A stretch of DNA of 64,000 bases, from assembly GCA_002269645.1 (NCBI GenBank), contig NIVC01001811.1, positions 248,001-312,000 on the forward strand, given 5' to 3'. The position numbers were made by a program, and so were the translations under genes. This DNA is from Macrostomum lignano. Lineage: Eukaryota. Numbering within the stretch: the stretch's first letter is position 1; every line of letters starts with the position of its first letter. The notes under the pieces are model-generated. The model was not told the origin of the DNA. It did not search any database and saw only the letters and a list, made by a program, of their open reading frames with translations. Positions 1,266-37,499 of the stretch are shown in pieces.

Positions 1266-1290
1266 TTCGTTTGCAGGCTGTTGTTATAAA

Positions 1291-15959: not shown

Positions 15960-16222
15960 AAAAATATGAAAAACAGAAGCCGCACCCCTTGCCGTATTTA
16001 TAGCAGTTGCCAAGAGGGGTTAGGAGCCTGATGGGTTTGGGAGCCTGAGGGGTCTCACTGAGTGGCCAGGATTGGCTGGTCAGAGGGGAGCCTATCCTGG
16101 CCCATAGAGGGGTCTCGGAGCCAAAGGGGTTGAGGGGCTCCCAAACCCATCAGGCTCCTAACCCCTCCTGGCAACTACTATAAATACTGCGAGGGGTACG
16201 GCTTCTGTTTTTCATACTTTTC
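15960..16222. promoter_or_regulatory. Palindromic bidirectional promoter-like element
   Basis: ~87-bp inverted arms (15960-16045, 16136-16222), each with TATAAATA pointing outward (15995-16002 minus, 16179-16186 plus). ATTGG lies in the spacer. The same sequence lies upstream of the SET gene at 19590-19700. Confidence 0.65.
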
Positions 16223-16809
16223 TAAGTTCATCTTCTTCAGTCTCTAAGTGTGTTATTATTTGATTATTATCAATTATTTGATTTCTTGTTCTTGTTCTTG
16301 TACTTTGTGTATTAGCTGATTTGCTTGTTTTATTTGACTTTTGTTTTTTATTTAGTTTTTGTAAATACTGTCTTGCCATTTGTAAATACTTTCATGTTTT
16401 TTGTAAATACTATCATGTTTTTTGTAAAGACTCATGTTTTTTGTAAATACTATCATGTTTTTTGTAAATACTTTCATGTTTTTGTAAATTCTATAGTAAT
16501 AACAGAAAGTTAATAATAATTTATGCATAATAATGTAATAAAATTAAACGTAATTCATTTAATATTTAATATGTAAGAAATATAAAAGTTTGTAGGTATA
16601 AATTATAACGCATTTTGTCATACATTTTCAGAAACAAATTGTCACAGATTTTAAGAATACGCGCGGCCTCCACTGACCCTCGTCGTGCTCAAATTCTAAT
16701 ACCTGTTTCTCTCTCATAATAATATCTTTCATAATAAATTCTACTAAATTCTACTGAATTCTTTAACAAATTCTTTATACTACTCGAACTACGTAATAAT
16801 TAGAAGGGA

Positions 16810-17340
16810 TTAGGTGCCACCTGCTCGTGGTAGCACATCTATTGATGAGACAAACAGCATCCGACGCATGGATAGATGCTCTATCACTTCTTAAATTCTC
16901 ACCTGCCCAGACTCAACCGTTCTCAACTGGCAGCTAGTCAAAGTTGGGCTAAGCAAACCTGTCTAGACTGGCATTTTTGGCGCCCCATCGGTCACAAAAG
17001 TGATTTCCGAGTGCCCCTTAATTTTGATGGATCTCGGCCGGACTTGACCCCCTGTACTCTGGGATAAATGTAGAAGCGATCCTCGTCGAAATCCGGGGTC
17101 AATAGGTCACTCTATGGGACCAGTCTGTTGTGCAATACTTAGCCTAGGAAGTGTCCAGCGTACCTCCATGCGCAGAAACGGTGAGGGGGCAATTACACTT
17201 TGTGGCAACGGCTGCCAGTCGACAGCGGAAGCACATCTAGCGACGTGTGTGGCGTCGTTAGAGCGAGCACAGCCTGGACTACATAGTGGGCTGGTCGGCC
17301 AGTCGGAATCGAACAGCTAAACATTCTCAAGGTACCTACA
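16810..17340 (-). repeat. Partial, reversed copy of the ~1.1-kb cassette repeat
   Basis: Reverse complement of segments at 21400-21760 and 22150-22290. Confidence 0.85.
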
Positions 17341-17559
17341 GGCAGTCACAGTGAGGGAGCAATATACCAATATGGATAGGCTGCAGAGGGCAGAAATGAT
17401 CAAAATGGTAGAGGATCGGAGATTATTATTATGACATAACAGAGACATCCCCCATAGTGTGCAAGAAGTAAAGTTTCGAGCCCGCTGCAACTGTCTATGG
17501 CCATTTATGTGTTAATTTTTTGTTTATAGAATAGGAAGGACGAAATGAAATGGAGATGC

Positions 17560-18052
17560 AATGATGTTGAACTATTTAATTTCTGTGTCGCCGTTGCCCT
17601 TGTCTGTCCGGCAGCCCGTGGGCTAGCCTTGAACACTCGCGGGGACGTGTACCCCAAGGGTCGGCTTGCTTGGGCAGCTTGGACAAAGAACCGCGGCTGC
17701 CTGAGGCAGATATAAGACGCGCGGATCTTCTCCAGCCATTCCTGCCTAAATAGAGATGGCAGGTGGAGGTCGTCGCAGGCCTTAGCCCGGAGGCCTGACC
17801 TGTCTCACACCCTCCTGGCATGCTGCCCGAGCCTTCGCAAGCGGGCTGGACGCCTCGACGGATGAATCACCCGTTTGCATCGTTGCGTTGAGATGCTCGA
17901 AGCTAGATGCCTCTACAGATGAATCACCCGTGTACATCGCAGCGTTGAGCTGACCGAAGCTAGATGCCTCGACGGATGAATCACCCGTGGGCTTCGGAGC
18001 GTTTAGATGCTTGAAGCTAGACGCCTCGACGAATGAATTACCCGTGGGCATC
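17560..18052. repeat. Shared downstream block plus 57-bp array (4 copies), cassette 1
   Basis: Unit GACGCCTCGACGGATGAATCACCCGTGGGCATCGCAGCGTTGAGATGCTCGAAGCTA. The same block occurs at 25200-25735 and 32500-33060. Confidence 0.9.
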
Positions 18053-18075
18053 CGAGCGTTCGGCTGAGAAAGAAT

Positions 18076-19422
18076 TCAATTCCTCAGCCACGGGTTCAAG
18101 CGGAGTGCCTCTCCTCGCCTCTCCCCATAGTCATACAGGAGCTCTTCTCCTATTGCTATGTCTCGGAGCGCTTCGAACCCCAGCAGCGGTACTCCGCTCG
18201 ACTCGACCACTATTGGCCGGACGTTAGCACTTTTCCTGCTATGATTCAGGTAGCGTCCGACATACTCTTTTTCTTCTGTCGAATCTACGCAGTAAGCGCG
18301 GCCTATCCATGAGAAGAAGAAGAGAAAGCACGTCGGCTTACCTTGCTCAATTAGCTGCTGCTCGCGCTCGCGCCGCTCCTTTTGGCCTTTGATAAGGACT
18401 CCGCCGTACCAACAGACAAACACACCACGGGCCATATTCAGCCTCGCAAATGTGCCAAGCCCGCTGCCGTCGACGCCTGCGGCACGGACAATAACGTTGC
18501 CGGAGTTCATAAACAATTTTCTGCGGAGGTCGGCCTGTGCTAGCTGGGCTGCAGGGGTCCTAAACCCGCTCGGCAGGTCATTTGCAGTTTCAGCGTCGGC
18601 ATCGTCGGAGATGATCCTCTTGTGTGGGGTCACAAAGGGAATCGGCTGAATGCGGCCTTCCGGAGTCACCTCCGTCTCTTGGTGGATTTGAGCAGCGCAA
18701 CTCGAGTCCGGACTTCGCCGCTGAGTCCACGGAGACTCTGGCAGGGCTTCGGCCTCCGACAGCGTCTTCTGCGGGGCCTCGGCCTCCGGTAGCGTCTCCT
18801 GCGGAGCCTCGGCCTCCGGCAGCGTCTCCTGCGGGGCCTCAGCCTCCGGCAGCGTCTCCTGCAGGGCTTGGGCTGCCAGTTCTGCCTGCTGTGCCAGCCA
18901 TTTCCTAAAATTGACCTCTTGGCGAGAATGAGAAATTTCGGCCGCTGCAGGCAGCCTAGCAGATCCTGCAGCAGCGTCGCAGTCATAGGCAGCAGCAGCT
19001 GGTGTCCTGGGAACGTCGGTGGTCGATGGCGTTGCTTCCGTCGCAACGTCCGGCAGTCTTGCCACAAACACGGTCGGATTCAAGGATCGAAGATCCCGGA
19101 TTCCATAATCAATAAGCAGGCGCAGCTCGTTCAGCCGTTTGGCGGCGCGCTGTCGAGCTTCATTGACGGCGTCACGGCCGCTGGGACATTCTTGATCCCA
19201 ATGTTGTTGTTTGTAGTGCTGCCGCAGGTTTGACGAGGCAAAGGCACCACACAGCAAGCACAGCTTCACATCTGGCTTGGCATGCCAACGATGATAAAGC
19301 ACTACGGCATTGACTCGATCGACCTCATTTGGGTGGGTCAATCGGCCGTGTCGTAGGAGATTATCTGCCCGCAAGACAGAATAATCGCAGAGAGGGCAGT
19401 GCAAATACCGACTGGTAAACAT
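18076..19422 (-). CDS. Paired C2H2-like zinc finger + SETD8/KMT5A-like SET-domain protein, copy 1 (~448 aa)
   Basis: CPLC-x12-H-x4-H and CLLC-x10-H-x4-H. The SET region GLGTFA...WYGG...YCVDSTEE...GRYLNHSR...DIAIGEELLYDYG...NPWLRN follows SETD8 to its C-terminus. A putative 109-nt 5'UTR intron (19533-19425) favours ATG 19422. Confidence 0.88.
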   Translation of the reverse strand: MFTSRYLHCPLCDYSVLRADNLLRHGRLTHPNEVDRVNAVVLYHRWHAKPDVKLCLLCGAFASSNLRQHYKQQHWDQECPSGRDAVNEARQRAAKRLNELRLLIDYGIRDLRSLNPTVFVARLPDVATEATPSTTDVPRTPAAAAYDCDAAAGSARLPAAAEISHSRQEVNFRKWLAQQAELAAQALQETLPEAEAPQETLPEAEAPQETLPEAEAPQKTLSEAEALPESPWTQRRSPDSSCAAQIHQETEVTPEGRIQPIPFVTPHKRIISDDADAETANDLPSGFRTPAAQLAQADLRRKLFMNSGNVIVRAAGVDGSGLGTFARLNMARGVFVCWYGGVLIKGQKERREREQQLIEQGKPTCFLFFFSWIGRAYCVDSTEEKEYVGRYLNHSRKSANVRPIVVESSGVPLLGFEALRDIAIGEELLYDYGERRGEALRLNPWLRN

Positions 19423-19589
19423 TTCTTGCATACAGAAAAATATAAAACTTAAATAAGCAAAAGTCAAATGAAACAAGAAAATCAGCAAATACACAAGGTA
19501 GGAAAGAAACAAGAAACAAGAAATCAAACTTACGAACTTATGAACTTCAACTTATGTACTTATGAACTTAAAGACGAACAGATGAAAAA

Positions 19590-19910
19590 AATATGAAAAA
19601 CAGAAGCCGCACCCCTCGCAGCATTTATAGTAGTTGCCAGGTGGGGTTAGGAGCCTGATGTGTTTAGGAGCCTGAGGGGTGTCACTGAGTGGCCAGGATT
19701 GGCTGGCCAGAGGGGGGCCAATCCTAGCCCATAGAGGGGTCTCGGAGCAAAAGGTTAGGCAGGATAGGCTGGTCAGAGGGGAGCTTGAGGCGTCTCGGAG
19801 CCTGACGGGTCTCAGAGCCTGACGGGTCTCAGGGCCTGAGGGGTCTCGGAGCCTGAGGGCTCTCGGAGCCTGAGGGCTCTCGGAACCTGAGGGGTCTCGG
19901 AGCCTGAGGG
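19590..19910 (-). promoter_or_regulatory. TATA/CCAAT promoter with upstream GGAGCCTGAGGG tandem array
   Basis: TATAAAT on minus at ~19624-19630, CCAAT motifs at ~19700-19725, and 17-19-bp repeats at 19790-19910. Similar arrays precede the other cassette genes. Confidence 0.55.
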
Positions 19911-19964
19911 GTTGATAGCCGATACCACTGAGAGCCTGAGAAGGAAATAACGCTTTACAAGAAC

Positions 19965-22520
19965 GGCTGCCAACCTGAAACGAAAGCACAACACACTTTA
20001 ATAAATGTTCTATGGGTTGCTGCAAGTTGCGCCATCGCCACGCCAATAGCGCCGAAGCCTTGGAAACTTGGTACTGTCAACAAATGCTAAATTGAGAAAA
20101 TTATTACACTTTGCGGGAACGGGTACCAGCCGACAGCCGCTTGAAATACATCGATTTGTGAGGTGTCATTAGATCGAGGACAGCCTGGGCTACATTGTGC
20201 GGTAGTTGGCCAGTCGGAATTTAACATTGGCAAAATTATAGACTACTTATGGCAGCAAGTAGCGGGTTTCTTAGGTGTAAAACGGCTGAAGATAGTTTAG
20301 CTTGCGTCGGACAGTCTCGCGACCGTCAAATTCCGACTCTACGTGTCGAAATACATTGGACTAGGTGTCTTTGTTTTTTTCAAAGTGTCTCTGCCAAAAT
20401 TTTGTACTTCGGGGTCTAAAGATTGACTGGCCACTTTCGGGAAGTCCGTCTGTCGCGGCGGAATCTACCACGAGCAGGTGGCACCCAATTCCGATGAATG
20501 CAATTCGATAGAGCATCACTAGAGCTTTCCAACGACTGCTGATACCAAGGGGAAATACCAAGGGGAAGGCTGGCTAATCGCACTCAAAGTGTCCAGCTGA
20601 TCTCCATGCGCAGAAATGGTGAGGGGGCAATTACACTTTGCGGCAACGGCTGCCAGTCAGAAACAGTAGCACATCTATTGATGAGACAAACATCTATCGA
20701 TAGATGCTCTATTATTTCTTAAATTCTCACATGCCCAGACTCACTTGACCCCCTGTACTCTGAGATAAATGTAGAACCGATCCCAGTCGAGATCCGGGGT
20801 TAATTGACCACTTTTTGGGGCTAGTCTGTTGCGCAATAATTAGCATTGAAAAACGCTATTGAACTACTGAGGAAATTATTACGCTTTAGTATACGCTTTA
20901 CGAAAACCAAAGACACCTAGTGCGATGTATTTTGACGCGTAAAGCCGCAATTTGACGGTCTCGAGACTGTCCAATGCAAGCTAAACTATCTTCAGCCACT
21001 TTACCCCTAAAATACGCACTACCATGTAGTATAAGTAGTATAGAATATTTTTAGCTGCTTGATTCCGACTGGCTGACCGGCCCAATGCGTAGTCCAGGCT
21101 GTCCTCAATCGAACGGCGCCACACACATCGCTAGATGTGCTTCTGTTGCCGACTGGTACCCGCTTGCGCAAAGCGTAAAAATACCCTCAATTTTTTTATT
21201 GTTGGGGAAGTTTCCAAAGCTACAGCTCCAACGCTATTGGCGCTTATGTGGCGCCGCTACCTTCAGACGATAGGGTATTTAATAGTGTGTCTATAGACGC
21301 TCACGGCACCCCGGTAGATGCCGCCGTTCTTTTTTGGCAGCGCGCCAAGTAAAGCGTAATAATTCCCTCAGTCGTTTTATAGCGTTTGCCTAGGCTAAGT
21401 ATTGCACAACAGACTGGTCCCATAGAGTGACCTATTGACCCCGGATTTCGACGGGGATCGCTTCTACATTTATCCCTGAGTACAGGGGGTCAAGTCCGGC
21501 CGAGATCCATCAAAATTAAGGGGCAGTCGGAAATCACTTTTGTGACCGATGGGGCGCCAAAAATGCCAGTCTAGACAGGCCTGTCTAGCCCAACTTTGAC
21601 TGGCTGCCATTTGAGATCGGTTGAGTCTGGGCAGGTGAGAATTTAAGAAGTGATAGAGCATCTATCGATGCGTCGGATGCTGTTTGTCTCATCAATAGAT
21701 GTGCTACCGTTTCCGGCTGGCAGCCGTTCCCGCAAAGTGTAATTGCCCCCTCACCGTTTCTGCGCATGGAGGTACGCTGGAGGTACGCTGCAGTACACTG
21801 CGCATGGAGTGCGGTTAGCCAGCCTTCCCCTTGGTATTTCCGGACGTTCTTGGTGTCGTTGGAAAGCTCTAGTGATGCTCTATCGAATTGCATTCATCGG
21901 AATTGGGTGCCACCTGCTCGTGGTAGATTCCGCCGCGACAGACGGACTTTCCGAAAGTGGCCAGTCAATCCCTTAGACCCCGAAGTACAAAATTTTGGCA
22001 GACACACTTTGAAAAAAGCAAAGACACCTAGTCCGATGTATTTCGACACGTAGAGTCGGAATTTGACGGTCGCGAGACTGTCCGACGCAAGCTAAACTAT
22101 CTTCAGCCGTTTTACACCCAAGAAACCCGCTACTTGCTACCATAAGTAGTATATAAGTTTTTTACTGTTCTATTCTGACTGGCCGACCAGCCCACTATGT
22201 AGTCCAGGCTGTGCTCGCTCTAACGACGCCACACACGTCGCTAGATGTGCTTCCGCTTTCGACTGGCAGCCGTTGCCACAAAGTGTAATAATTCCCTCAA
22301 TATTTTTAGGGCTAGAGTTGCAAGTTTCCAAGGCTCCAGCTTCGGCGCTATTGGCGCCAAAGTGGCGCCGCTACCGTCAGACGATTGGGTATTTATTAAA
22401 GTGTGTATAGACGCTCGCGTCGCGCCGGTAGATGCCGCCGTTCTTTTTTGGCAACGCGCCAAGTAAAGCGTAATAATTCCCTCAGTCGTTTTATAGCGTT
22501 TGCTAAGGCTATGTATACAT
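19965..22520. repeat. ~1.1-kb cassette repeat: one reversed copy then ~1.5 forward copies (inverted junction near 20880)
   Basis: AGACACCTAGT(C/G)CGATGTATTT recurs at ~20910 and ~22022 and is reversed at ~20340-20370. Confidence 0.9.
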
Positions 22521-23399
22521 AAGTAGGCCACACAAGCAGGTGGCAGCTAATTCTGATGAATGCTATTGGATAGAACACTTATAGGGCTTTCCAATGACAC
22601 CACGAACGTTGAGATATACCCAGGTGAAGGCTGGCAAATTTCACTCAAATTGTCCATGTTATCTAGTGTCGCAATACGGCTAAGAAAATTATTACACAAT
22701 GCTTGGCCGACCTCAAAGAATAGCTCTAACCCAAACCTAGGGAAACTTCTATCTTTTGATATTACTTAAGTGGGATTTGGGTACATAATTCTCAAAGTAG
22801 GCGTTGTCGAATAGGAGAGATGTTGTAGTGCGCTTGTGTGCTGAGAAAATCATGGTCTCATGGACCGTATATTTGAGCTACTATATAGTATCACTGCCGA
22901 CGTGCGGCTACAATGTTACGCAATAGTTGAGGGACAAGTCAGTGCACGTTGGTCGAGAGGGCTATAGTTATTCATCACAGAAAAGTAAAGGCATAGACTG
23001 GGCGTACACTACATCTCTCCCCCAACCAAAAAAGTACAAAGTGTGTAATTCGATTAACAGAGATAAACGGAACGAGATTTCGGAACAGTTGTGTTAAATT
23101 TACGTTGGGTGAAATTTACGTATGCATGTACATGTGATACGAGCGTAATTAGTAGTCTGCAGTCTGCAGTTAGTAGGATGATGCTCTGTTTTGCTGGCCT
23201 TGTGGTTTGCTGACGTGCTGTCGTGGGGCCAGTGGACCTCCCAAATGCCGTCGCACCCTTCGGTCACCTGGCGGAGCGCCGATCGAAATTAGCGGCGTGC
23301 GCCGTCTGGTCACCAGCTTCCAGCCGGGCTCGGACGGCTGCTGAACGTCTGCTGTGTCTGCCGGCTGCTGTTGGCCGGCTGAGAGCGTCTCGCTCGCGC

Positions 23400-23607
23400 C
23401 AACGCCTCCGATGTCCTGGCGCTGGCGTCTCCTTGACACAGCCGCCTGCGCCTGCCGCGCCATGCCAGGCCACCAGAATTTCCTTCTCAGCCGGTCGATG
23501 GCCTTCCTCCTGCCGAATTGACCCTGGTGGGCCCAACTGACGGTCTGCTGCTGAAGCGCTGCGGGTACAACGATTCTGTTGCCCCTGAGCAGCACGCCGT
23601 CACGCAC
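23400..23607 (-). pseudogene. Gypsy integrase zinc-binding region remnant; catalytic core absent
   Basis: DGVLLRGNRIVVP...WAHQGQFG...LRRKFWWPGM is the typical pre-integrase HHCC region. Confidence 0.75.
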
Positions 23608-24983
23608 CTGAAGCTCCCCTTGAGCGAGTGGAAGCTGCCGGCCTGGGCTGTAGCGCCGGAGCGCCAGTTGCCAGTTGCCAACGCCTGCATGACGAAGGTC
23701 AGAGCCGGGTCCCCCGCTGTGGCATCGCGGACGCTCTTGATGGTCGGGCCTTCCGGTGCGGACTTGACGGAGTTGAGCTGCTGCAGCGGTACGTTGTCCT
23801 GGACTGGTTGCGCGTTTAGAGAATCGCTCAGACTTGTTGCCTTTCTGGCCGGTGCCCGGGCCTGCGTCCCCAGACTCAGCAGCTGCAGGGATGTCGAGGT
23901 TGCACGGCCGAGCACGCTGGTGCCGGTCCCTGGGACGATGATGAAGCTGGCGCGCCGGACCATTGAGCCAACCGAAACCTGCAGGCTGCAGGCTCCCACA
24001 GTGCGCAGAGGTTTAGCTGAACGAAATGAGAAAATCTTTGTCGTCGGCTGCAGGCCTGGGGGTTCCGGGAGCTCTCGCCAGGCTGCCTCGGTGAGGATGT
24101 TACAGTCGGCTCCGCTGTCCACCAGCACCTGCACTGGAGTCGCTTCCACCAGCACCGTGGCAAGAGCCGCTGTTGCGTTCGTGTCGGAGGCCATCACGGT
24201 CAGGCAGAAGACGTCGTCCTCTTCGCCCGAACTGTCGCTGCCGACCCGCAGAGCTCGCACGTCCTCCGGCCGGGACAGGCAGGCCTTGGCGAGGTGATTC
24301 GGCTTGCCGCATCGGTTGCAGGTCTTGCCTACCGCTGCGCTGCAGCTGCGGTGGCCGAAGTTGCCGCAGCAGATGCACTTTGGCTGCGTGCGATCGGCTG
24401 CCTGCGTGGCTGATCTCTGCGGCTGCCCTGGCGGGCTGGACTCGCGCTTCCGCAGCCGCTGCACGGTCACTGCGCTGGTCTCCATGAGGCTGGCCTGCGC
24501 CTCCGCTGCCTCCATGGCCCTTGCCACCCGGACCGCCTGGCCCAGGTCCACGTTGTCCATGGCCAGCAGCTTCCTGCGGAGCTGCTCGGAGCTGCAGCCG
24601 GCGATCAGCTGGTCACGGATCAGCGAGTCCCGGAGGCCTTCGAATTTGCAACAGTCCGCGGTGTTGTTGAGCCGCCGCAGCCAGTCGTCCAGGGACTCTC
24701 CGGTGAAGGGCAGGTTGAGCTGGCTGGTGAAGTGCTCATTGAGAGCCTTGATGAGCTTGTCGACGTCATCATCGGTGACGGCGAGTCCGGCTGCAACGGC
24801 CTGCAGGTCCTCGCCCGCTGTGTATAGAAGGAGTTGGCGAAGTCGCTTCTTGTCAGAGATATCAGCAGCTGCGGCGAACAGCTGGAACTGAGCCAGTCAC
24901 TTGCTCCACTTCGTATGTGCCGCATGGGGCTCCTCGCGCAAGTTCAATGTGGGCGGTATGGGTAGGCTTGCTTGCGACGCCAT
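23487..24983 (-). pseudogene. Gypsy gag-protease (one premature TGA); RT and RNase H deleted
   Basis: Single frame from ATG 24983 with zinc knuckles (CNRCGKPNHLAKAC) and aspartic protease VLVDSGAD. No RT motif. Confidence 0.85.
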
Positions 24984-25199
24984 TGTAGTGCGCTTGTGTG
25001 CTGAGAAAATCATGGTCTCATGGACCGTATATTTGAGCTACTATATAGTATCACTGCCGACGTGCGGCTACAATGTTACGCAATAGTTGAGGGACAAGTC
25101 AGTGCACGTTGGTCGAGAGGGCTATAGTTATTCATCACAGAAGAGTAAAGGCATAGACTGGGCGTACACTACAGATGTAATGAAATTAAGATGCACTGA

Positions 25200-25735
25200 T
25201 GTCGAACTATTTAATTTCTGTGTCGCCGTTGCCCTTGTCTGTCCGGCAGCCCGTGGGCTAGCCTTGAACACTCGCGGGGACGTGTACCCCAAGGGTCGGC
25301 TTGCTTGGGCAGCTTGGACGAAGAACCGCGGCTGCCTGAGGCAGATATAAGACGCGCGGATCTTCTCCAGCCATTCCTGTCTAAATAGAGATGGCAGGTG
25401 GAGGTCGTCGCAGGCCTTAGCCCGGAGGCCTGACCTGTCTCACATCCTCCTGGCATGCTGCCCGAGCCTTCGCGAGCGGGCTGGACGCCTCGACGGATGA
25501 ATCACCGTGGGCATCGCAGCGTTGAGCTGACCGACGCTAGACGCCTCGACGGATGAATCACCTGTGGGCATCGCAGCATTGAGCAGCTTGACGCTAGACG
25601 CCTCGACGGATGAATCACCCGTGGGCATCGTAGCGTTGAGATGTTCGAAGCTAGACGCCTCGACAGATGAATCACCTGAGGGCATCGCAGCGTTGAACTG
25701 CTCGACGATAGACGCCTCGACGGACATCGCGTCCG
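25200..25735. repeat. Shared downstream block plus 57-bp array (5 copies), cassette 2
   Basis: Near-identical to 17560-18052. Confidence 0.9.
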
Positions 25736-25749
25736 TGTGCGTCGCAGCG

Positions 25750-26839
25750 TTAATACTTACGGAACTGGGATTTCCATCGGTTGAGAATCGGCTTTAACCG
25801 AATCTGCAGCTCCGGATCATTCAGAGGCGGGAATCCAGGAGCGTTCGACAATTCCTGGAGCAACCTCTTCTTGGAGGGTTTCACAGGATTTTCGCTTGTC
25901 ATCCCATACGATCGGGCAAGCTTGTCAACTAGGCCATGCATGCGCTCACCAAGGTCGCAGTCTAGAAGCTGCATTGAAGCAGCCTTCCGCTGGGCCCTTA
26001 TCGAGAGCGGCAACTTCGGAACTCTTGCCAAGTCGACTTGGCGACCAGAGTGTGAGTTCCCTACTTGACTCACGGACGGCCCAATGTCGCTGTCGCTGTC
26101 ATCTGGAGCATCTTCTGAGCGGCTCGATTGCTTTTCCGGTGACTCGTCATCGCTGTCATCATCGCGATGAGGTCCAGGAGACGATTTCCTTATCGTCGAA
26201 ATGTCGTCCAGGAACGAGACAAAATCGTCGATGCACCCGCGCACGCACCACTTGGTCCAGCTTGCATGTTGAGTCGGAACCGACTTTTCACGGTTGAGAG
26301 TCGGCATTAACAAAATTTGCAGCTCCGGATCATTCAGAGGCGGGAATCCAGGAGCGTTCGACAATTCCTGGAGCAACCTCTCCTTGGAGGGTTTCACAGG
26401 ATTTTCGCTTGTCATCCCAAACGATCGGGCAAGCTTGTCAACTAGGCCATGCATGCGCTCACAAGGTCGCAGTCTAGAAGCTGCATTGAAGCAGCCTTCC
26501 GCTGGGCCCTTATCGAGAGCGGCAACTTCGGAACTCTTGCCAAGTCGACTTGGAGACCAGAGCGCGAGTTCCTTTCATGACTCGCAGACGGCCCGATGTC
26601 GCTGTCGCTGTCATCTGAATCATCTTCCGAGGCGCTCGAGTGCTTTTCCGGTGACTCGTCATCGCTGTCATCATCGCGATGAGGTCCAGGAGACGATTTT
26701 CTTATCGTCGATGCACCGCGCACGCACCACTTGGTCCAGCTTTCATGTTGGGATGATCACTTAGACGAAGGTCTTCGACGATAACAAGAGACTCATAATC
26801 AATGTCATCTTCATCTTCCTCAATGCGATCGCACTCCAT
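25750..26839 (-). pseudogene. Degenerate acidic orphan gene of cassette 2 with internal ~540-bp tandem duplication
   Basis: ATG 26839 (MECDRIEEDEDDIDY...). Blocks 25785-26220 and 26320-26750 are duplicated. TATA-like and GGAGCC array lie upstream at 26920-27175. Confidence 0.5.
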
Positions 26840-27174
26840 ATTGTAAGGAAATTGCGTTGAAAAAAATAGAAAATTTGAAAGAAACTTTAGAAAGATAGGG
26901 CCCAGAATCTGCAGGGAAATCTATTTTATAGCTGGAGCCAGGAGGACTTGGGAGCCTGGGAAATTCGGAGCCCTTAAGACTCTCCAAACAGGCTTGAGAG
27001 TCAAGAGGATTTGGGAGCCTGGGAGGTTTCGGAGCCGGGGATGTTTCGAAGCCTGAAAGGTTTCGGAGCCTGGGAGGTTTCAAAGCCCTAAAGACACTCC
27101 AAAGAGGCTTCAGAATCTAGAGGATTTGGGAGCATGTGAGGTTTCGGAGCCTGAGAGGTTTCGGAACCTGGGAT

Positions 27175-29105
27175 GCAATTCGATGTATTTCGACGCGTAG
27201 AGTAGGAACTTGACGGTCTCGAGACTGTCCGACGCAAGCTAAACAATCTACAACCGTTTTGCCTCTAAAAAACCTGCTATCATATTCTGTAAGTAGTATA
27301 GAATGTTTTAGCTGTTTGATTTCGACTGGCCGACCGGCCCACTATGTAGTCCAGGCTGTCATCCTCCGAACGAAGCCTCACACGTCGCTAGTTGTGCTTC
27401 CGCTGTCGACTGGCAGCCGTTGCCACAAAGTGTAATAATTCCCTCAATATTTTTAGGGCTTGAGGGGCACGTTTTCAAGCCTACAGCTTCGGCGCTATTG
27501 ACGCCAAAGTGGCGCCGCTTACGTCAGACGATAGGATATTTATTAAAGTGTCTATAGACGCTCGCGTCGCGCCGGTAGATGCCACCGTTCTTTTTTGGCA
27601 ACGCGCCAAGTAAAGCGTAATAATTCCCTCAGTTGTTTAATAGCGTTTTTCAATGCTAATTATTGCGCAACAGACTGGCCCCATACAGTGGCCTATTGAC
27701 CCCGGATCTGGACAAAGATCGCTTCTACATTTTTTCCAGAGTACAGGGAGTAAAGTCCGGCCGAGATCCATCAAAATTAAGGGGCAGTCGGAAATCACTT
27801 TTGTGACCGATGGGGCGCCAAAAATGCCAGTCTAGACAGGCCTGTTTAGCTCAACTTTGACTGGCTGCCAGTTGAGAACGGTTGAGTCTGGGCAAGTGAG
27901 AATTTAAGAAGTAATAGAGCATCCATCGATGCGTCGGATGCTGTTTGTCTAATCAATAGATGTGCTACCGTTTCCGACTGGCAGCCGTTGCCGCAAAGTG
28001 TAATTGCCCCCTCACCGTTTCAGCGCCTGGAGATACGCTGGACACTTTGAGTGCGATTAGCCAGCCTTCTGGGTATTTCCAGATGTTCTTAGTGTCGTTG
28101 GAAGGCCCTAGTGATGCTCTATTGCATTCATCGGAATTGGGTGCCACCTGCTCGTGGTAGATTCCGCCGCGACAGACGGACTTCCCGAAAGTGGCCAGTC
28201 GATCCCATAGACCTCGAAGTACGAGCTACAAAATTTTGGCAGAAGCACTTTGAAAAAAGCAAAGAAACCTAGTCCGATGTATTTCGACACGTAGAGTCGG
28301 AATGTGACGGTCGCGAGACTGTCCGACGCAAGCTAAACTATCTTCAGCCGTTTTACACCCAAGAAACCCGCTACTTGCTACTATAAGTAGTATAGAAGTT
28401 TTTAGCTGTTCTATTCTTTCTGGCCGACCAGCCCACTATGTAGCCCAGGCTGTCCTCGCTCTAACGACGCCTCACACGTCGCTAGATGTGCTTTCGCTCT
28501 CGACTGGCAGCCGTTGCCACAAAGTGTAATAATTCCCTCAATATTTTTAGGGCTTGAGGGGCAAGTTTCCAAGGCTCCAGCTTCGGCGCTATTGGCGCGA
28601 AAGTGGCGCCGCTACCGTCAGACGATAGGGTATTCATTAATGATCAATAGCTCGCGTCGCGCCGGTAGATGCCAACGTTCTCTTTTGGCAACGCGCCAAA
28701 TAAAGCGTAATAATTCCCTCAGTTGTTTAATAGCGTTTTTCAATGCTAAATATTGTGCAACAGACTGGCCCCATAGAGTGGCCTATTGACCCCGTATCTC
28801 GACGAGGTTCGCTTCTACATTTATCCCAGAGTACAGGGGGTCAAGTCCGGCCGAGATCCATCAAAATTAAGGGGCAGTCGGAAATCACTTTTGTGACCGG
28901 TGGGGCGCCAAAATTGCCAGTGTAGACAGGCCTGTTTAGCTCAACTTTGACTGGCTGCCAGTTGAGAACGGTTGAATCTGGGCAGGTGAGAATTTAAGTA
29001 GTAATAGAGCATCTATTGATGCGTCGGATGCTGCTTTTCGCATCAATAGATGTGCTACCGTTTCCGACTGGCAGCCGTTCCCGCAAAGTGTAATTACCCC
29101 CTCAA
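27175..29105 (+). repeat. ~1.1-kb cassette repeat, ~1.8 tandem copies
   Basis: GATGTATTTCGAC at ~27182 and ~28276 (period ~1095). Confidence 0.9.
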
Positions 29106-29330
29106 CGTTGCGCAGCTTGACGCTAGACGCCTCGACGAATAAATCATCCGTGGGCATCGCAGCGTTGAGTTGCTCGAAGCTAGACGCCTCGACGGATTAA
29201 TCTTCCGTGGGCATCGCAGCGTTGCGCAGCTTGACGCTAGACGCCTCGACGGATGAATTACCCGTGGGCATCGCAGCGTTGAGATTCACGGAGCTAGACG
29301 CCTTGACGGATGAATCACCCGTGGGTCTAG
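29105..29330. repeat. 57-bp array, cassette 3
   Basis: Same unit as at 17849 and 32780. Confidence 0.9.
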
Positions 29331-29352
29331 GTTAGTCTTGTTTTGGCTGACA

Positions 29353-30114
29353 CTAGTCTTTTAGCCATGGGTACTGTCTTAGTACCTTTGGGCGGCTCTC
29401 GCCGTAATCAAAGAGGAGTTCCTCGCCTGCCTTTATGTCGCGAGCGGCCTGGAAGGCTAGCTGGGGCTTGTCGCCTACATCAACCACAGTCGGCTTTAAG
29501 TTTTCTTTCGGCTGACTATGATTGATGTAGCGTCCGACATACTCAGTCGTGTCGGTAGCATCGACGCAGAAGGCTCGGCCTCGCCAGGAGAAAAAGAAAA
29601 GGAATGAGCAAGTCTTCCCTTGATCTAGAAGTTGCTGCTCCCGTTCGAGGCGGGCTTTTTGCCCTTGGATCATGTGTCCGCCGTAGCAGCAGACAATGAC
29701 GCCTTTTGCAAGGTTGATCCGGGCAAAAGCGCCCAGGCCCTCAGCATCAACGCTACCGGTCCGGACCACGACATTACCGGACTGTATCAACGTCCGGCGC
29801 CACAGGTCGGCCTGTACGATCTGCCTCACTGACGCGATACCGGACGGCAGGGACCGGTCTTCACTTCCCCGGCTAGCTCGACCGTAGGGCGTCACATGAG
29901 GGACCGGTATGCGCGCCCCTTCCGGCGTGATAATAACGTCATTAACAACTGCCTCGCAATGAGCGGTCTCCATTGCAGGCGAAGGCACTGTCGGAGAGGC
30001 GGCAGCGTGGCCAGAAGACTGCGCCGGTGCTCTTCCGGTGACGTTAACCGGCGTTCTGGTCACAGGGGCATCTTCTGCTTCGGCTTCTCGCTGGAGCCAA
30101 ATGCTAAAGGGAAT
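29353..30114 (-). CDS. Zinc finger-SET protein copy 2, exon 2 (SET domain)
   Basis: TTGTCAG acceptor then IPFSIWLQRE... SET motifs CVDATD, GRYINHS, DIKAGEELLFDYG, YPWLKD. Confidence 0.88.
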   Translation of the reverse strand: MPFSIWLQREAEAEDAPVTRTPVNVTGRAPAQSSGHAAASPTVPSPAMETAHCEAVVNDVIITPEGARIPVPHVTPYGRASRGSEDRSLPSGIASVRQIVQADLWRRTLIQSGNVVVRTGSVDAEGLGAFARINLAKGVIVCCYGGHMIQGQKARLEREQQLLDQGKTCSFLFFFSWRGRAFCVDATDTTEYVGRYINHSQPKENLKPTVVDVGDKPQLAFQAARDIKAGEELLFDYGESRPKVLRQYPWLKD

Positions 30115-30251
30115 CTGACAAATAAGATAAAAGACATACTCATAATACTATATCGCGTTTGTACTACTCGAACATGCATTGAAAGCTGCAGGTGACCCAA
30201 CTCTAGCCTGTTAACTAATTTCACTGAATAATTAACTAACTAACTAACTAC

Positions 30252-30291
<40 letters not shown>

Positions 30292-30384
30292 TGCACTAAA
30301 TAAATACTGAATAACGAATTAATTAACTTACTTTCATTAAATGTAACCGAAGCGTAACCATAACCAAATTTTGATTTGATTTAC

Positions 30385-30924
30385 CTCATCGCGCTTCTCC
30401 GGTACAGCGGCAGCAGCTGAGGCGGCGCCAGCGATTGAAGCGGCGGCAGCTGAGGAGGCGTCAGCGATTGAAGCGGCGGCAGCTGAAGCGGCGTCAGGGA
30501 TTGAAGCGGCGGCAGCTGAGGCGACGTCAGGGGTTGAAGCGGCGGCAGATTCCGGCATCCTTTCTAGCAACACGGCTGGGTTGGTGTTGATTTCATGCCG
30601 AATGCCGTAAAAGGCCAGCAGCCGCAGGCGCTCCAACCTCGCCTCTGCCCTAGCCCTTGCCTCAGTGACGGCTGCCCGGCCGACTTCAAACTCCATGCCG
30701 TTGTGCTTCTGCCGCATATGCTGGCGCATGTTGGTGGCAGCGAATGTGTCGCATAGTTGGCACAGCTTGAGATCATTTTTGCGGTGCCAACGTCTGTACA
30801 CTATGTACGCTTCGACACTATCGAACTCAGCTGCGTGACAGTTTCGACCATGTGGAAGGAGTTTGTCGGCGCGATTCGTTTCGAAGTCGCAAATCGGGCA
30901 ATTTAGACGATCCATAATATTCAT
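30385..30924 (-). CDS. Zinc finger-SET protein copy 2, exon 1 (two C2H2-like fingers)
   Basis: CPIC-x12-H-x4-H and CQLC-x10-H-x4-H align with copy 1. GAG|GTAAAT phase-0 donor, 270-nt intron, spliced product 433 aa. Confidence 0.82.
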
Positions 30925-31254
30925 ATTAATTTCAATTGCTAGTAAAATATTCTAGTATTTCTCGTACAAGTCAAATGAAATATGAAAGAGAGGCAAATGA
31001 AACTTTGAGTATTACAAAAATTGAAAACTGAAAAAGCATAAGCCAGTATAAGCCAGCTCACGTCCTTATATACCATACTTTTCGGAGGCTCCCAAATCCT
31101 CTAGACTCTCAAGCCTCTTTGGAGAGTCTTAAGGTCTCCAAAACCTCCCAGGCCCCGAAACCTCTCAGGCTCCGAATCCTCCCAGGCTCCGAAACATCCC
31201 AGGCTCCAAAATCCTCAACAAATCTGCAAATCCTCCCAATCCTCATCCAAAACA

Positions 31255-32350
31255 AATACACCTAGTCCGATGCATTTCGACGCGTAGAGTCGGAATGTGA
31301 CGGTCTGGAGACTGTCCGACGCAAGCTAAACTATCTTCAGCCGTTTTACACCTAAGAAACCCGCTACTTGCTACAGAAAGTAGTATAGAAGTTTTTAGCT
31401 GTTCTATTCTGACTGGCCGACCAGCCCACTATGTAGTCCAGGCTGTCATCGTTCTAACGACGCCACACACGTCGCTAGATGTGCTTCGGCTGTCGACTGG
31501 CAGCCGTTGCCACAAAGTGTAATAATTCCCTCAATTTTGTTAGGGTTAGAGGGGCATGTTTCCAAGGCTCCAGCTTCGGCGCTATTGGCGCCAAAGTGGC
31601 GCCGCTATCGCCAGACGATAGGGTATTTATTAAAGTGTCTATAGACGATCACGGCATGCCGGTAGATGCCACCGTTCCTTGTTGGCAGCGCACCAAGTAT
31701 AGCGTAATAATTCCCTCAGTCGTTTTATAGCGTTTGCCTAGGCTAAGTATTGCACAACAGACTGGTCCCATAGAGTGACCTATTGACCCCGGATTTCGGC
31801 GTGGATCGCTTCTACATTTATCCAAAAGTACAGAGGATCAAGTCCGGCCGAGATCCATCAAAATTAAGGGGCAGTCGGAAATCACTTTTGTGACCGATGG
31901 GGCGCCAAAAATGCCACTCTAGACAGGCCTGTCTAGCCCAACTTTGACTGGCTGCCAGTTGAGATCGGTTGAGTCTGGGCTGGTGAGTATTCTGGAAGTG
32001 ATAGAGCATCTATCGATGCGTCGGATGCCGTTTGTCTCATCAATAGATGTGCTACCGTTTTCGTCTGGCAGCGCTTCCCACAAAGTGTAATTTTCCCCTC
32101 ACCGTTACTGTGCCTGTAGGTTTCCTGAGACTTTCAATGCACTTTGCCAGGCTTCTGGTGGGTATTTCCGGACGTTCTTGGTGTCGTTGGAAAGCCCTAG
32201 TGATGCTCTATCGAACTGCATTCATCGGAATTAGGTGCCACCTGCTCGTGGTAGATTCCGCCGCGACAGACGGACTTCCCGAAAGTGGCCAGTCAATCCC
32301 TTAGACCCCAAAGTACAAAATTTTGCCAGAGACACTTTGAAAAGAGACAC
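31255..32350 (+). repeat. ~1.1-kb cassette repeat, one full copy
   Basis: ACACCTAGTC at ~31258 and ~32347. Confidence 0.9.
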
Positions 32351-32499
32351 CTAGTCTGAAATTTTGCATTTTCCACTGGCTTTTTTCTATGGAAACTCCT
32401 ATCTTTTGATTGTACTGAAGTGGGATTGGAGGCACATATTACTTAGAGTAGGCGTTGTAGAATAGGAGGGATGAAATGAAATGAAGGTGTACTGATGTC

Positions 32500-33060
32500 T
32501 AACTATTTAATTTCTGTGTCGCCGTTGCCCTTGTCTGTCCGGCAGCCCGTGGGCTAGCCTTGAACACTCGCGGGGACGTGTACCCCAAGGGTCGGCTTGC
32601 TTGGGCAGCTTGGACGAAGAACCGCGGCTGCCTGAGGCAGATATAAAACGCGCGGATCTTCTCCAGCCATTCCTGCCTAAATAGAGATGGCAGGTGGAAG
32701 GCGTCGCTGGTCTTAGCCCGGAGGCCTGACCTGTCTCACACCCTCCTGGCATGCTGCCCGAGCCTTCGCGAGCGGGCTGGACGCCTCGACGGATGAATCA
32801 CCCGTGGGCATCGCAGCGTTGAGATGCTTGAAGCTAGACGCCTCGACGGATGAATCACCTGTGGGCATCGCAGCGTTGAGATGTTCGAAGCTAGACGCCT
32901 CGACGGATGAATCATCCGTGGGCATCGCAGCGTTGAGATGTTCGAAGCTAGACGCCTCGACGGATGAATCACCCGTGGGCATCGCAGCGTTGAGATGCTC
33001 GAAGCTAGACGCCTCGACGGATGAATCACCCGTGGGCATCGCAGTGTTGAGCTGCCCGAC
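32500..33060. repeat. Shared downstream block plus 57-bp array (5 copies), cassette 4
   Basis: Unit starts at 32780, 32837, 32894, 32951 and 33008. Confidence 0.9.
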
Positions 33061-33094: not shown

Positions 33095-34039
33095 TCAGAA
33101 ATGGCCTCGCTGGCTCGGGTGCTCCAGCTGGCTTGTCTGGCCACGGTTTATGTAGACGCGCAGATACTCTAAGTACTCAAGAAACAGTTTGCGGCAGCGA
33201 GCTACAAACGGTTTCCCGCGGAGCTGCCTAGCATCAGCAGTAGGATGCTGCTTTGAACAGTGCTTTTTTAAGCTAGTTTCGGAGACGAAAATGCAAAAAG
33301 GGCACAAAAGAAGCCCTTGTCTTTCCTTTTCGCAATTCGTCTTGGCTTTAGCCTCATAAAGAGACAGGCGCTTAATCGCCTCTAGCCGCACTGGGTGTGT
33401 CTCGTTATGTTTGGAATGGCAATGCTGCTTAATTACGTCACTCCGAACTTTGGAGGAGCAGAGGGGGCACGTGCGCATTGCACCATGGCCTCCACGCTGA
33501 CCTGCTCCGCGTGAGGACGTGGCAGCACTTTCCTGATTTTCATCAAGGAACTCCTGAATTACTGCATCAATATATGTGTGCACGCCATTTGGGTCGAACT
33601 CACTGCCCTCTGAAGCATCAAATGGCCTCACACAAGGTGGGTCCGATGAATTGGTAATTGTGGCACCTTCGCTATACAGGAGCTCCAGAAATCCACCTGG
33701 CATGGGTGCCTCAGACATGGGAACCTCATCAGCCGACAGATCGACTGTGGGTACCTCCATGTAGGGCACATCAGCGAGGGCGGCAGAGTCAGGAGCCTCA
33801 GGGATGCTTATGATCATGGGCTCGTCAGGCACATAAGACATGGGCAGCCCAGGCATGAGTATCTCATCAGCCGACAGATCGACTGTGGGTGAATTCATGT
33901 AGGGTACATCAGGCGCCTCAATGATGTTAAAGAACATGGGCTCCTCAGCGCTTGGGCCGATCGTAGCCACCTCCGCGGGAACGCCAATGTCCTCATCAAT
34001 CAAAAAAGCAATTAACTGATCAAAGGCTTGATCGTCCAT
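33095..34039 (-). CDS. Acidic N-terminus + paired C2H2-like finger protein, 314 aa
   Basis: Intact ORF with CPLC-x11-H-x4-H and CPFC-x10-H-x4-H, and a duplicated DVPYMxxPTVDLSADE motif. It occupies the gene slot of cassette 4. Confidence 0.72.
   Translation of the reverse strand: MDDQAFDQLIAFLIDEDIGVPAEVATIGPSAEEPMFFNIIEAPDVPYMNSPTVDLSADEILMPGLPMSYVPDEPMIISIPEAPDSAALADVPYMEVPTVDLSADEVPMSEAPMPGGFLELLYSEGATITNSSDPPCVRPFDASEGSEFDPNGVHTYIDAVIQEFLDENQESAATSSRGAGQRGGHGAMRTCPLCSSKVRSDVIKQHCHSKHNETHPVRLEAIKRLSLYEAKAKTNCEKERQGLLLCPFCIFVSETSLKKHCSKQHPTADARQLRGKPFVARCRKLFLEYLEYLRVYINRGQTSQLEHPSQRGHF

Positions 34040-37455: not shown

Positions 37456-37499
<44 letters not shown>

What the first reader, a model, noticed from the sequence alone, without database searches (positions are those of the whole stretch)
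18076..30924. Zinc finger-SETD8 fusions: potential sequence-targeted H4K20 methyltransferases carried by mobile DNA
Seen: two diverged paralogues, both with intact frames, join two C2H2-like fingers to a SET domain that tracks SETD8/PR-Set7 to the terminal PWL(K/R)x. Established: canonical SETD8 has no zinc fingers, is the H4K20 monomethylase and is recruited via PCNA; H4K20 methylation affects origin licensing, 53BP1 binding and compaction. Inference: a captured SETD8 catalytic domain retargeted by fingers, in a PRDM9-like design, letting the element write its own chromatin state.
Basis: partly seen in the sequence, partly recalled or inferred. Interest (0 to 1): 0.85.

Follow-up and report, generated by a model that had tools for sequence, protein, structure and literature searches.

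The report
Zinc-finger SETD8-like methyltransferase genes, transposon-linked
Two intact, selectively maintained genes fuse a pair of zinc fingers to a SETD8/KMT5A-type lysine methyltransferase domain; their only close relatives, in the flatworm Macrostomum lignano, sit directly behind KDZ transposase genes, so this looks like a transposon-linked chromatin writer, although no transposase accompanies the two copies in this window.

Summary
Gene A (18076-19431, minus strand, one exon, 451 aa) and gene C (30385-30924 plus 29353-30114, one GT-AG intron, 433 aa) are 48% identical. Each has two C2H2 fingers plus a helix, a repetitive linker, and a SET domain whose best solved match is KMT5A/SETD8 (E 2e-26). 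It ends in PWL(R/K)x.

The catalytic motifs are kept. Both domains are under purifying selection (dN/dS about 0.2-0.3). The PCNA-degron motif of canonical KMT5A is absent.

Among 1.8 billion representative proteins, only four share the architecture. Three are from Macrostomum lignano and one is from an unnamed sequencing run. Two diverged M. lignano lineages each lie just downstream of a KDZ (Kyakuja-Dileera-Zisupton) transposase gene, next to finger-only genes.

The window holds no transposase. A and C belong to a head-to-tail array of four units (D, C, B, A) that share near-identical 3' modules, a layout also seen in the M. lignano KDZ loci.

The link to mobile DNA is indirect. No element ends were found. 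H4K20 specificity and self-targeting are untested. The design is not PRDM9-like. I rate it a new variant of transposon-associated SET genes, of moderate interest.

The parts
18076..19431 (-). Gene A: intronless ZF-SET coding sequence, 451 aa plus stop
   Evidence: Single ORF. Its start matches relatives. dN 0.38-0.48 against C and P0001, with dS saturated.
19096..19404 (-). Gene A finger module: finger 1 at 19333-19398, finger 2 at 19201-19260, conserved helix to about 19100
   Evidence: Invariant C12, C15, H28, H33, C58, C61, H72, H77. PDB profile hits to CTCF and Zif268 fingers. AF2 gives pLDDT 87-89 with a beta-beta-alpha shape for finger 1 only.
18082..18561 (-). Gene A KMT5A-like catalytic region (Pfam SET 18124-18462), running to the C-terminal PWLRN
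   Evidence: GxG, Y-G-G, NHS and ELLYDYG motifs are kept.
18744..18867 (-). 30-bp in-frame tandem repeat in the linker of gene A
   Evidence: Linker dN/dS is about 0.6 in C vs P0001.
30385..30924 (-). Gene C exon 1: finger module (about 30601-30903; fingers at 30835-30900 and 30703-30762) plus an Ala/Ser-rich linker with a 33-bp repeat
30115..30384 (-). Gene C intron: GT..AG, phase 0, contains (TAAC)n
   Evidence: Read from the sequence. The M. lignano gene has the same position and phase. No RNA evidence.
29353..30114 (-). Gene C exon 2: linker plus KMT5A-like SET (Pfam SET 29401-29739), ending in PWLKD. It has F at the position of the first Y of ELLYDYG.
33095..34039 (-). Unit D: 314-aa ORF with an acidic N-terminus and the same two-finger-plus-helix module at its C-terminus (33134-33472). 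No SET domain.
   Evidence: hhalign probability 95.8%, E 7e-9. HMM E 1.8e-10 on the six-frame translation.
25750..26840 (-). Unit B: ORF region with no recognisable domain. It is not one open frame: three ORF pieces, so at least two interruptions, together with an internal tandem duplication of about 0.5 kb. Introns versus decay is unresolved.
17524..18067 (-). Shared 3' module behind gene A: 57-bp tandem array (17845-18067) plus a tail of about 320 bp
   Evidence: 92% identical to 32455-32991 and to 25179-25694.
29106..29325 (-). 57-bp tandem array directly behind gene C (no tail; it abuts a 1.1-kb repeat copy)
25174..25751 (-). Shared 3' module behind unit B (array plus tail), cut by an LTR-element insertion
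32455..33059 (-). Shared 3' module behind unit D (array plus tail)
19624..19912 (-). Upstream region of gene A: 17-bp tandem array (19780-19912) and a TATAAA motif (19624-19629), about 200 nt before the ATG
   Evidence: The motif was read by eye, so a promoter role is inferred.
31066..31216 (-). Upstream region of gene C: 17-bp tandem array (31136-31216) and a TATATAA motif (31066-31072), about 150 nt before the ATG
   Evidence: A promoter role is inferred.
20903..22036 (+). Reference copy of the roughly 1.1-kb spacer repeat. Other copies: 22015-about 22516, 27181-28277, 28256-29109, 31249-32359. Inverted pieces: 19991-20743 and 16829-17321.
   Evidence: 85-91% identity between copies. No Rfam or tRNA hit.

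Best explanation
A and C are functional members of a small macrostomid-flatworm gene family. In this family an N-terminal two-finger C2H2 module plus helix, encoded on its own exon, is joined through a disordered linker to a KMT5A/SETD8-class SET domain. The family belongs to the accessory gene set of KDZ (Kyakuja-Dileera-Zisupton type) DNA-transposon loci. In M. lignano two diverged versions each follow a KDZ transposase gene, alongside finger-only genes, and every gene is followed by a near-identical 3' module. The window shows the same cassette-like layout without a transposase: four co-oriented units (D, C, B, A) with shared 3' modules and spacers. It is therefore most likely a transposase-less derivative of such a locus, either non-autonomous or decayed, or one retained by the host. 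Inferred mechanism: the SET domain uses SAM to methylate a lysine, by homology H4K20 (mono-methylation in A; possibly a higher state in C, which has F at the Phe/Tyr-switch position). Recruitment would come from the fingers rather than from PCNA. Finger 1 carries a Zif268-like recognition helix, so DNA binding is plausible, and the short tandem arrays flanking the units are candidate binding sites. What is shown: the architecture, the class of SET domain, intact motifs, selection, transposase adjacency in relatives, and shared modules. What is inferred: substrate, DNA binding, target sites, and any benefit to an element.
For: The SET domain is KMT5A-class: PDB E 1.8e-26 against 1e-6 for the next family, and only KMT5A homologues were retrieved. 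Motifs are intact. dN/dS for C vs P0001 is 0.31 in the fingers, 0.21 in SET and 0.60 in the linker; A vs C in SET gives dN 0.38 and dS above 2. Among 1.84 billion representatives, only P0001, P0016, P0017 and P0018 match the finger part. KDZ transposase genes lie directly upstream and co-oriented in L001 (P0001) and in L002/L003/L004 (P0017). The two KDZ proteins are about 44-54% identical and the two ZF-SET proteins about 38-45%, so the pair has diverged together. Finger-only ORFs occur in the same loci and in the window. A KDZ gene and a ZF-SET gene come from the same third sample. Near-identical 3' modules follow unrelated genes both in the window (92-93%) and in the M. lignano loci (97-99.7%). 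The PIP-degron motif is absent from all five ZF-SET proteins and present in canonical KMT5A hits. The finger profile hits DNA-binding fingers of CTCF and Zif268.
Against: No KDZ remnant exists anywhere in the 64-kb window, even at tblastn E up to 10. No terminal inverted repeats or target-site duplications were found for any locus. L002, L003 and L004 are one locus duplicated over 9-18 kb, consistent with polyploidy, so they are not independent insertions. Independent transposase adjacency therefore rests on two loci. The SET-only tree does not recover the five proteins as one clade, so common origin rests on the shared finger module. Substrate and DNA binding are untested. The AF2 model was poor (mean pLDDT 46). 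The source organism is unidentified, and copy number in its genome is unknown.
Confidence: 0.55

Rival explanations
1. Host gene family. The ZF-SET genes and the finger-only genes are ordinary lineage-specific host genes, possibly domesticated long ago, that expanded by tandem duplication. The KDZ neighbours in M. lignano are a domesticated partner or a coincidence of a repeat-rich genome. Shared flanks reflect gene conversion within a tandem cluster.
For: The window has no transposase. Each unit has its own TATA-like motif and poly(A)-like signal. Selection is purifying. An intron is conserved between species or paralogues. No element ends were found. The four M. lignano P0017 loci are large duplicated segments.
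Against: Two independently diverged KDZ plus ZF-SET pairs keep the same order and orientation. KDZ and ZF-SET co-occur in a third sample. The KDZ proteins keep a full-length transposase domain. The cluster sits in a GC-rich, repeat-dense block.
Confidence: 0.3
2. These are simply the organism's canonical KMT5A/SETD8 orthologues, which gained fingers in this lineage.
For: KMT5A is the best match for the SET domain. No separate canonical KMT5A from a macrostomid could be identified with the tools available.
Against: At least four deeply diverged paralogous lineages exist. SET identity to canonical KMT5A is only about 37-40%, and the PIP-degron motif is missing. Two copies 48% identical lie 10 kb apart. 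Relatives lie next to transposase genes.
Confidence: 0.05
3. A PRDM9-like, fast-evolving, sequence-specific targeting system.
For: A SET domain is combined with C2H2 fingers. Finger 1 has canonical DNA-reading positions, and position +3 varies between members.
Against: There are only two fingers, about 24 residues apart, with no tandem Krueppel-type linkers. Finger dN/dS is about 0.3. The SET domain is KMT5A-class; the PRDM2_PR match is far below its cut-off. The domain order is reversed.
Confidence: 0.05
4. Decaying pseudogene copies evolving neutrally.
For: The surroundings are repeat-rich and rearranged. Unit B next door is interrupted.
Against: A has 451 and C has 433 uninterrupted codons despite saturated dS. 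dN/dS is well below 1 in both domains, and the catalytic motifs are kept.
Confidence: 0.03

Closest known systems
KMT5A / SETD8 / PR-Set7 (canonical H4K20 monomethylase)
   Same: The SET domain class is the same, with the N-flank helix and the C-flank ending in PWL(K/R)x at the protein's end. There is no post-SET Cys cluster. The GxG, NHS and ELLYDYG motifs are kept.
   Different: The N-terminus carries fingers instead of a basic, PIP-degron-bearing region. SET identity is about 37-40%. The family is multi-paralogue, and relatives lie next to transposase genes. C and P0018 have F at the Phe/Tyr-switch position.
SET-domain genes carried by DNA transposons (HarbingerS and MuDR families of Phytophthora; Kojima and Jurka 2014, as cited in PMC12730594)
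   Same: A histone-methyltransferase-type gene sits as an accessory gene beside a transposase gene.
   Different: The transposase superfamily differs (KDZ), the host is a metazoan flatworm, the SET domain is KMT5A-class, and it is fused to an element-family finger module. Mobility of the flatworm loci has not been shown.
Fungal KDZ (Kyakuja-Dileera-Zisupton) transposons carrying TET/JBP dioxygenase genes (PMC12730594)
   Same: It is the same transposase superfamily, accompanied by an epigenetic-mark enzyme as an accessory gene.
   Different: The enzyme here is a protein lysine methyltransferase, not a DNA-base dioxygenase. The host is an animal. There are additional finger-only genes and repeated 3' modules.
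PRDM family / PRDM9
   Same: A methyltransferase domain and C2H2 fingers occur in one polypeptide.
   Different: See the rival explanation: the SET class, finger number and spacing, domain order and selection regime all differ.
SETMAR (SET gene fused to a mariner transposase, primates)
   Same: A SET domain and a DNA transposon are brought together.
   Different: In SETMAR the host SET gene captured the transposase as a fused domain. Here the SET protein is separate from the transposase and is fused to fingers.

Membership tests
KMT5A/SETD8 class of SET methyltransferases | SET domain most similar to KMT5A, clearly ahead of other SET classes | tested here: met
   PDB hit E 1.8e-26 vs 1e-6 for EZH2. 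All named homologues are KMT5A.
KMT5A/SETD8 class of SET methyltransferases | Cofactor and catalytic motifs (GxG, conserved Tyr before GG, NHS, ELxYDY), and a C-flank that ends the protein with PWL(K/R)x | tested here: met
   Nearly invariant columns in the alignment with KMT5A. In gene C the first Y of the ELLYDYG motif is F.
KMT5A/SETD8 class of SET methyltransferases | PCNA-interacting PIP-degron upstream of the SET domain | tested here: not met
   The motif is absent in A, C, P0001, P0017 and P0018. It matched 11 of the 12 canonical-type KMT5A comparators scanned. P0028 missed the pattern but shows a PIP-like stretch by eye; P0030 is less clear.
KMT5A/SETD8 class of SET methyltransferases | Orthology: one gene per genome in conserved context | tested here: not met
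   Two copies in the window are 48% identical, and at least three more diverged lineages exist elsewhere.
KMT5A/SETD8 class of SET methyltransferases | H4K20 (mono)methylation activity | not testable with these tools
   Inferred from homology only.
Cargo of a KDZ (Kyakuja-Dileera-Zisupton) DNA transposon | KDZ transposase gene in the same unit | tested here: not met
   In the window there is no hit. In the relatives the feature is met: L001, L002, L003 and L004 all have a co-oriented KDZ gene 0.7-2 kb upstream.
Cargo of a KDZ (Kyakuja-Dileera-Zisupton) DNA transposon | Defined element ends (terminal inverted repeats, target-site duplication) | tested here: inconclusive
   No convincing inverted repeats bracket the gene sets in L001 or L002. 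The window units show only a mosaic of repeats.
Cargo of a KDZ (Kyakuja-Dileera-Zisupton) DNA transposon | Multiple copies at unrelated genomic sites | not testable with these tools
   No eukaryotic genome could be searched. The three P0017 loci are one segment duplicated.
PRDM / PRDM9-type finger-targeted methyltransferases | PR-type SET domain plus a tandem array of Krueppel-type fingers | tested here: not met
   PRDM2_PR scores 16 bits against a cut-off of 27. There are two isolated fingers.
Classical C2H2 zinc finger | Cx2-4Cx12Hx3-5H spacing and beta-beta-alpha fold | tested here: met
   Finger 1 has the spacing, gives profile hits to CTCF and Zif268, and AF2 shows a beta-hairpin plus helix at pLDDT 87-89. 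Finger 2 (Cx2Cx10-11Hx4H) is atypical and modelled with low confidence.

The most novel reading that the evidence does not exclude
Macrostomid KDZ transposon loci are cassette arrays. Each accessory gene (transposase, finger-only proteins, ZF-SET) is followed by a near-identical 3' module that is duplicated whenever a gene is added. The ZF-SET protein would be an element-encoded H4K20 methyltransferase that the element's own finger module directs to the element's short tandem arrays, so the element writes its own chromatin state.
Probability: 0.15. Interest if true: 0.8.

Novelty: new variant of a known kind. Interest (0 to 1): 0.55.

Why it matters
Transposon-borne chromatin or DNA-mark enzymes are known from oomycete Harbinger and MuDR elements (SET) and from fungal KDZ elements (TET/JBP). 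I found no description of an animal DNA-transposon locus carrying a KMT5A-class methyltransferase, nor of one fused to a DNA-binding-type module shared with neighbouring accessory genes (literature searches). If the link holds, it offers a natural example of a retargeted H4K20-class writer without PCNA coupling. It would also give a handle on how DNA transposons interact with host chromatin in a regenerating flatworm model lineage. The repeated 3' modules behind unrelated genes are a separate, unexplained organisational feature worth a genome-wide look.

Tried and rejected
1. A word-indexed homologue search with the whole of gene A, and another with the KDZ exon, were swamped by low-complexity words (8000 candidates, 1-2 hits). 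The exhaustive profile search was the informative one.
2. Exact look-ups of eight window proteins found nothing, so the source genome is not in the protein collection and the organism stays unidentified. The only DNA similarity to M. lignano is in the coding exons (about 71%).
3. An AF2 model of gene A with a 12-row alignment was too poor for a fold search, so none was run.
4. A neighbour-joining tree of 172 SET domains did not resolve the family.
5. Searches for inverted repeats as element ends gave nothing convincing.
6. Rfam and tRNA scans, run to explain the 1.1-kb spacer repeat, were negative.
7. The M. lignano 20-bp satellite is absent from the window.
8. Larger KMT5A-like hits (P0015, P0031 and others) show no transposon domains.
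9. The contigs holding KDZ and ZF-SET from run SRR19430222 do not overlap.
10. The idea that gene A is a simple LINE-made retrocopy was considered because it lacks the intron. It was set aside because A keeps the family's upstream array and TATA layout, and no clear poly(A) tract or duplication flanks it.
Full report
WHAT IS THERE. The window is eukaryotic and repeat-rich. A GC-rich block at about 14-44 kb lies between AT-richer flanks.

Gene A sits on the minus strand as a single open frame, 19431-18076 (451 aa). The mechanical ORF extends to a TTG at 19527, but the ATG at 19431 puts the first finger about 10 residues from the start, as in every relative.

Gene C has two exons, 30924-30385 and 30114-29353 (433 aa). 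The intron is 270 nt, GT..AG and phase 0, with a polypyrimidine tract and a (TAAC)n run. The M. lignano homologue P0001 has an intron at the same codon boundary and phase. P0017 also has an intron in the linker (96 nt, different phase). Gene A has none. The finger module and the SET domain are therefore on separate exons in three of the four genes with known structure.

THE DOMAINS.
- SET domain. Pfam SET scores are E 1.8e-14 (A) and 6.5e-16 (C). The fourteen best solved structures are all KMT5A/SETD8 (E 1.8e-26 to 7e-23). Next come a Cryptosporidium SET protein (4e-17) and EZH2 (3e-6). The alignment runs to the last residues (NPWLRN, YPWLKD). It keeps the GxG, Y-G-G, NHS and ELLYDYG motifs.
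- Phe/Tyr switch. Gene C and P0018 have F at the first Y of ELLYDYG. From my own knowledge of the SET8 literature, this is the Phe/Tyr-switch position, and a Y-to-F change there raises the methylation state. That is a lead, not a result.
- PIP-degron. The motif matched 11 of the 12 canonical-type KMT5A proteins scanned here and is absent from all five ZF-SET proteins. For the role of that motif see PMC4682171. For KMT5A as the H4K20 monomethylase with non-histone substrates see PMC5034662.
- Fingers. The N-terminal module is Cx2Cx12Hx4H, then about 24 residues, then Cx2Cx10-11Hx4H, then a conserved helix. All eight ligands and 17 other positions are invariant in five proteins. A profile of it hits CTCF and Zif268 fingers. 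AF2 modelled finger 1 as a beta-hairpin plus helix at pLDDT 87-89, but the rest of the model was poor (mean 46). The finger 1 helix reads R-(A/S)-D-x-L-L-R, the pattern of DNA-reading fingers. This makes DNA binding plausible but proves nothing.

SELECTION. Values are from NG86 and YN00 on codon alignments.
- C vs P0001: dN/dS is 0.31 in the fingers, 0.21 in pre-SET plus SET, and 0.60 in the linker, with dS about 0.8-1.1.
- A vs C and A vs P0001: dS is saturated or undefined. dN is 0.38-0.48 in the domains and 0.78-1.1 in the linker.
- C is closer to P0001 (60% aa) than to A (48%), so the A/C split is older than the C/P0001 split.
- The linkers carry independent in-frame tandem repeats (30 bp in A, 33 bp in C).
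- Conclusion: neither copy is dead or neutral.

RELATIVES. An exhaustive profile search of 1.84 billion representative proteins gave 4049 hits at E up to 1e-3. Only four of the listed hits cover the finger part:
- P0001 (M. lignano, 409 aa).
- P0016 (M. lignano, fragment).
- P0017 (M. lignano, 300 aa, four accessions).
- P0018 (349 aa, on a 1.7-kb contig of run SRR19430222).
Every other listed hit matches the SET part alone, at 101-133 bits apart from two multi-SET proteins (P0014, P0015). The window's own proteins are not in the collection. The only DNA similarity to M. lignano is about 71% in the coding exons. The source is probably a macrostomid flatworm, but it was not identified.

THE TRANSPOSASE LINK.
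- In L001 (P0001), an annotated 830-aa KDZ gene lies about 2 kb upstream on the same strand.
- In L002, L003 and L004 (P0017), an 808-809-aa KDZ gene (P0177; Pfam KDZ 1.6e-31, full-length domain) ends 722 bp upstream on the same strand.
- L002, L003 and L004 are 98.5-99.8% identical over 9-18 kb, so they count as one locus.
- L001 and L002 are independent. Their KDZ proteins are about 44-54% identical and their ZF-SET proteins about 38-45%. Their DNA no longer aligns, except for a 20-bp satellite about 2.7 kb upstream of each KDZ gene.
- The run that yielded P0018 also yielded a related KDZ gene (P0178, about 50% identical), on a separate short contig.
- The finger module also occurs without SET: in L002 downstream of ZF-SET (E 3e-13), in L001 between KDZ and ZF-SET (E 2e-5), and in the window as the C-terminus of ORF D (HMM E 2e-10; hhalign probability 95.8%).
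- The window contains no KDZ remnant at all.
- No inverted repeats bracket the M. lignano gene sets.

THE LOCAL ARCHITECTURE. A and C are two of four co-oriented units: D 34039-33095, C, B (about 26840-25750) and A.
- Each unit is followed, within about 10-30 bp of its stop codon, by a 57-bp tandem array. In three units the same tail of about 320 bp then follows. Array plus tail are 92-93% identical between units.
- The spacers then contain one or two copies of a 1.1-kb repeat (85-91% identical), a 17-bp array, and a TATA-like motif 150-200 nt before the ATG.
- The coding DNA of A and C, by contrast, is about 71% identical at best. B and D are unrelated apart from D's finger module.
- The same pattern holds in M. 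lignano. In L002 a 591-bp segment behind KDZ recurs behind ZF-SET (97.3%), and 250 bp of it recurs behind the finger-only ORF. In L001 a 295-bp segment behind KDZ recurs behind ZF-SET (99.7%).
- The modules differ between L001, L002 and the window.
This shared organisation is the best evidence that the window cluster is the same kind of locus as the KDZ loci. Why the modules stay so similar is unexplained. Possibilities are gene conversion, or duplication of a terminator-promoter module when a gene is added.

INTERPRETATION. The SET domain is KMT5A-class, intact and under selection, and it lacks the PCNA-coupling motif.
- 'Carried by mobile DNA' is supported only through relatives and layout, not by element ends, copy number or a transposase in the window.
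- The PRDM9 analogy fails on anatomy and on selection regime.
- The most likely account (confidence 0.55) is an accessory gene family of KDZ transposon loci, present here in a transposase-less derivative cluster.
- The main rival (0.3) is a host gene cluster, possibly domesticated.

KNOWN RELATIVES OF THE IDEA. SET genes in Phytophthora HarbingerS and MuDR elements, and TET/JBP genes in fungal KDZ elements, are described (PMC12730594). I found nothing on KDZ plus SET in animals, or on Macrostomum KDZ elements. That library does not cover everything. I therefore rate this a new variant of a known kind, of moderate interest.

Noticed in passing
window 17524-18067, 25174-25751, 29106-29325, 32455-33059; L002 9232-9808, 11065-11655, 12966-13211; L001 8092-8386, 12070-12364: Unrelated consecutive genes are each followed by a near-identical 3' module: 92-93% identity in the window and 97-99.7% in the M. 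lignano KDZ loci. The layout is cassette-like and its cause is unknown.
   Followed up: partly
window 22824-25173: LTR-retrotransposon remnant with 191-bp LTRs 99% identical and a 5-bp target duplication, inserted into the tail behind unit B. It keeps an open gag/protease-like ORF and a fragment of the integrase zinc-binding domain. The reverse transcriptase/RNase H part is missing (one large internal deletion, and at least one frame change between the remaining pieces).
   Followed up: partly
window 39428-43812 (-): Non-LTR retrotransposon with two open frames: ORF2 of 1175 aa (endonuclease, reverse transcriptase, RNase H) and ORF1 of 299 aa carrying a PHD finger.
   Followed up: no
window 36363-36719 and 37106-37975 (-): Possible further finger-module gene upstream of unit D. 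One ORF ends in a CPVC motif, and a downstream piece carries the rest of finger 1 and a second finger. The HMM E-value is only 0.35, and an intron or insertion would have to lie between the pieces.
   Followed up: partly
window 29401-29739 (gene C) and P0018: F replaces the first Y of the ELLYDYG motif (the Phe/Tyr-switch position of SET domains) in C and P0018, but not in A, P0001 or P0017. This hints at different product methylation states within the family.
   Followed up: no
L006 (Logan SRR33465455 contig, 51 kb): The best SET-only hit (P0019, 138 aa) lies on a gene-dense contig with Evr1_Alr and HARE-HTH genes. This looks like a giant-virus-type genome that encodes a KMT5A-like SET protein.
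   Followed up: no
window 15815-16127 and 16136-16359: Two orphan copies (78-79% identity, one inverted) of the 5' region of gene A, with no gene behind them.
   Followed up: no
window 1160-2647 (-): ORF with a match to the listerin N-terminal domain (E 5.5e-13). It also contains a 42-bp x 17 tandem array at 97% identity. It is probably an exon of a host gene at the edge of the window.
   Followed up: no
window 58538-59365 (+): ORF with Tc1/mariner-type helix-turn-helix domains (Sleeping Beauty HTH, HTH_32), a transposase N-terminal part.
   Followed up: no
window 1030-1216 vs L005 55-243: A 190-bp stretch upstream of the ZF-SET gene of run SRR19430222 is 72% identical to a stretch near the left end of the window. 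It is probably a shared repeat family between the two organisms.
   Followed up: no
L001 604-2306; L002 1-4085: A 20-bp satellite (78-80% identical between loci) lies about 2.7 kb upstream of both KDZ genes, although the rest of the two loci no longer aligns at DNA level. It is absent from the window.
   Followed up: partly
P0014 (Holothuria leucospilota, 799 aa), P0015 (Phyllopteryx taeniolatus, 4152 aa): Annotated proteins made of five to eight tandem KMT5A-like SET segments. This suggests local amplification of KMT5A-like domains in other animals as well. P0015 showed no transposon domain; P0014 was not scanned.
   Followed up: partly
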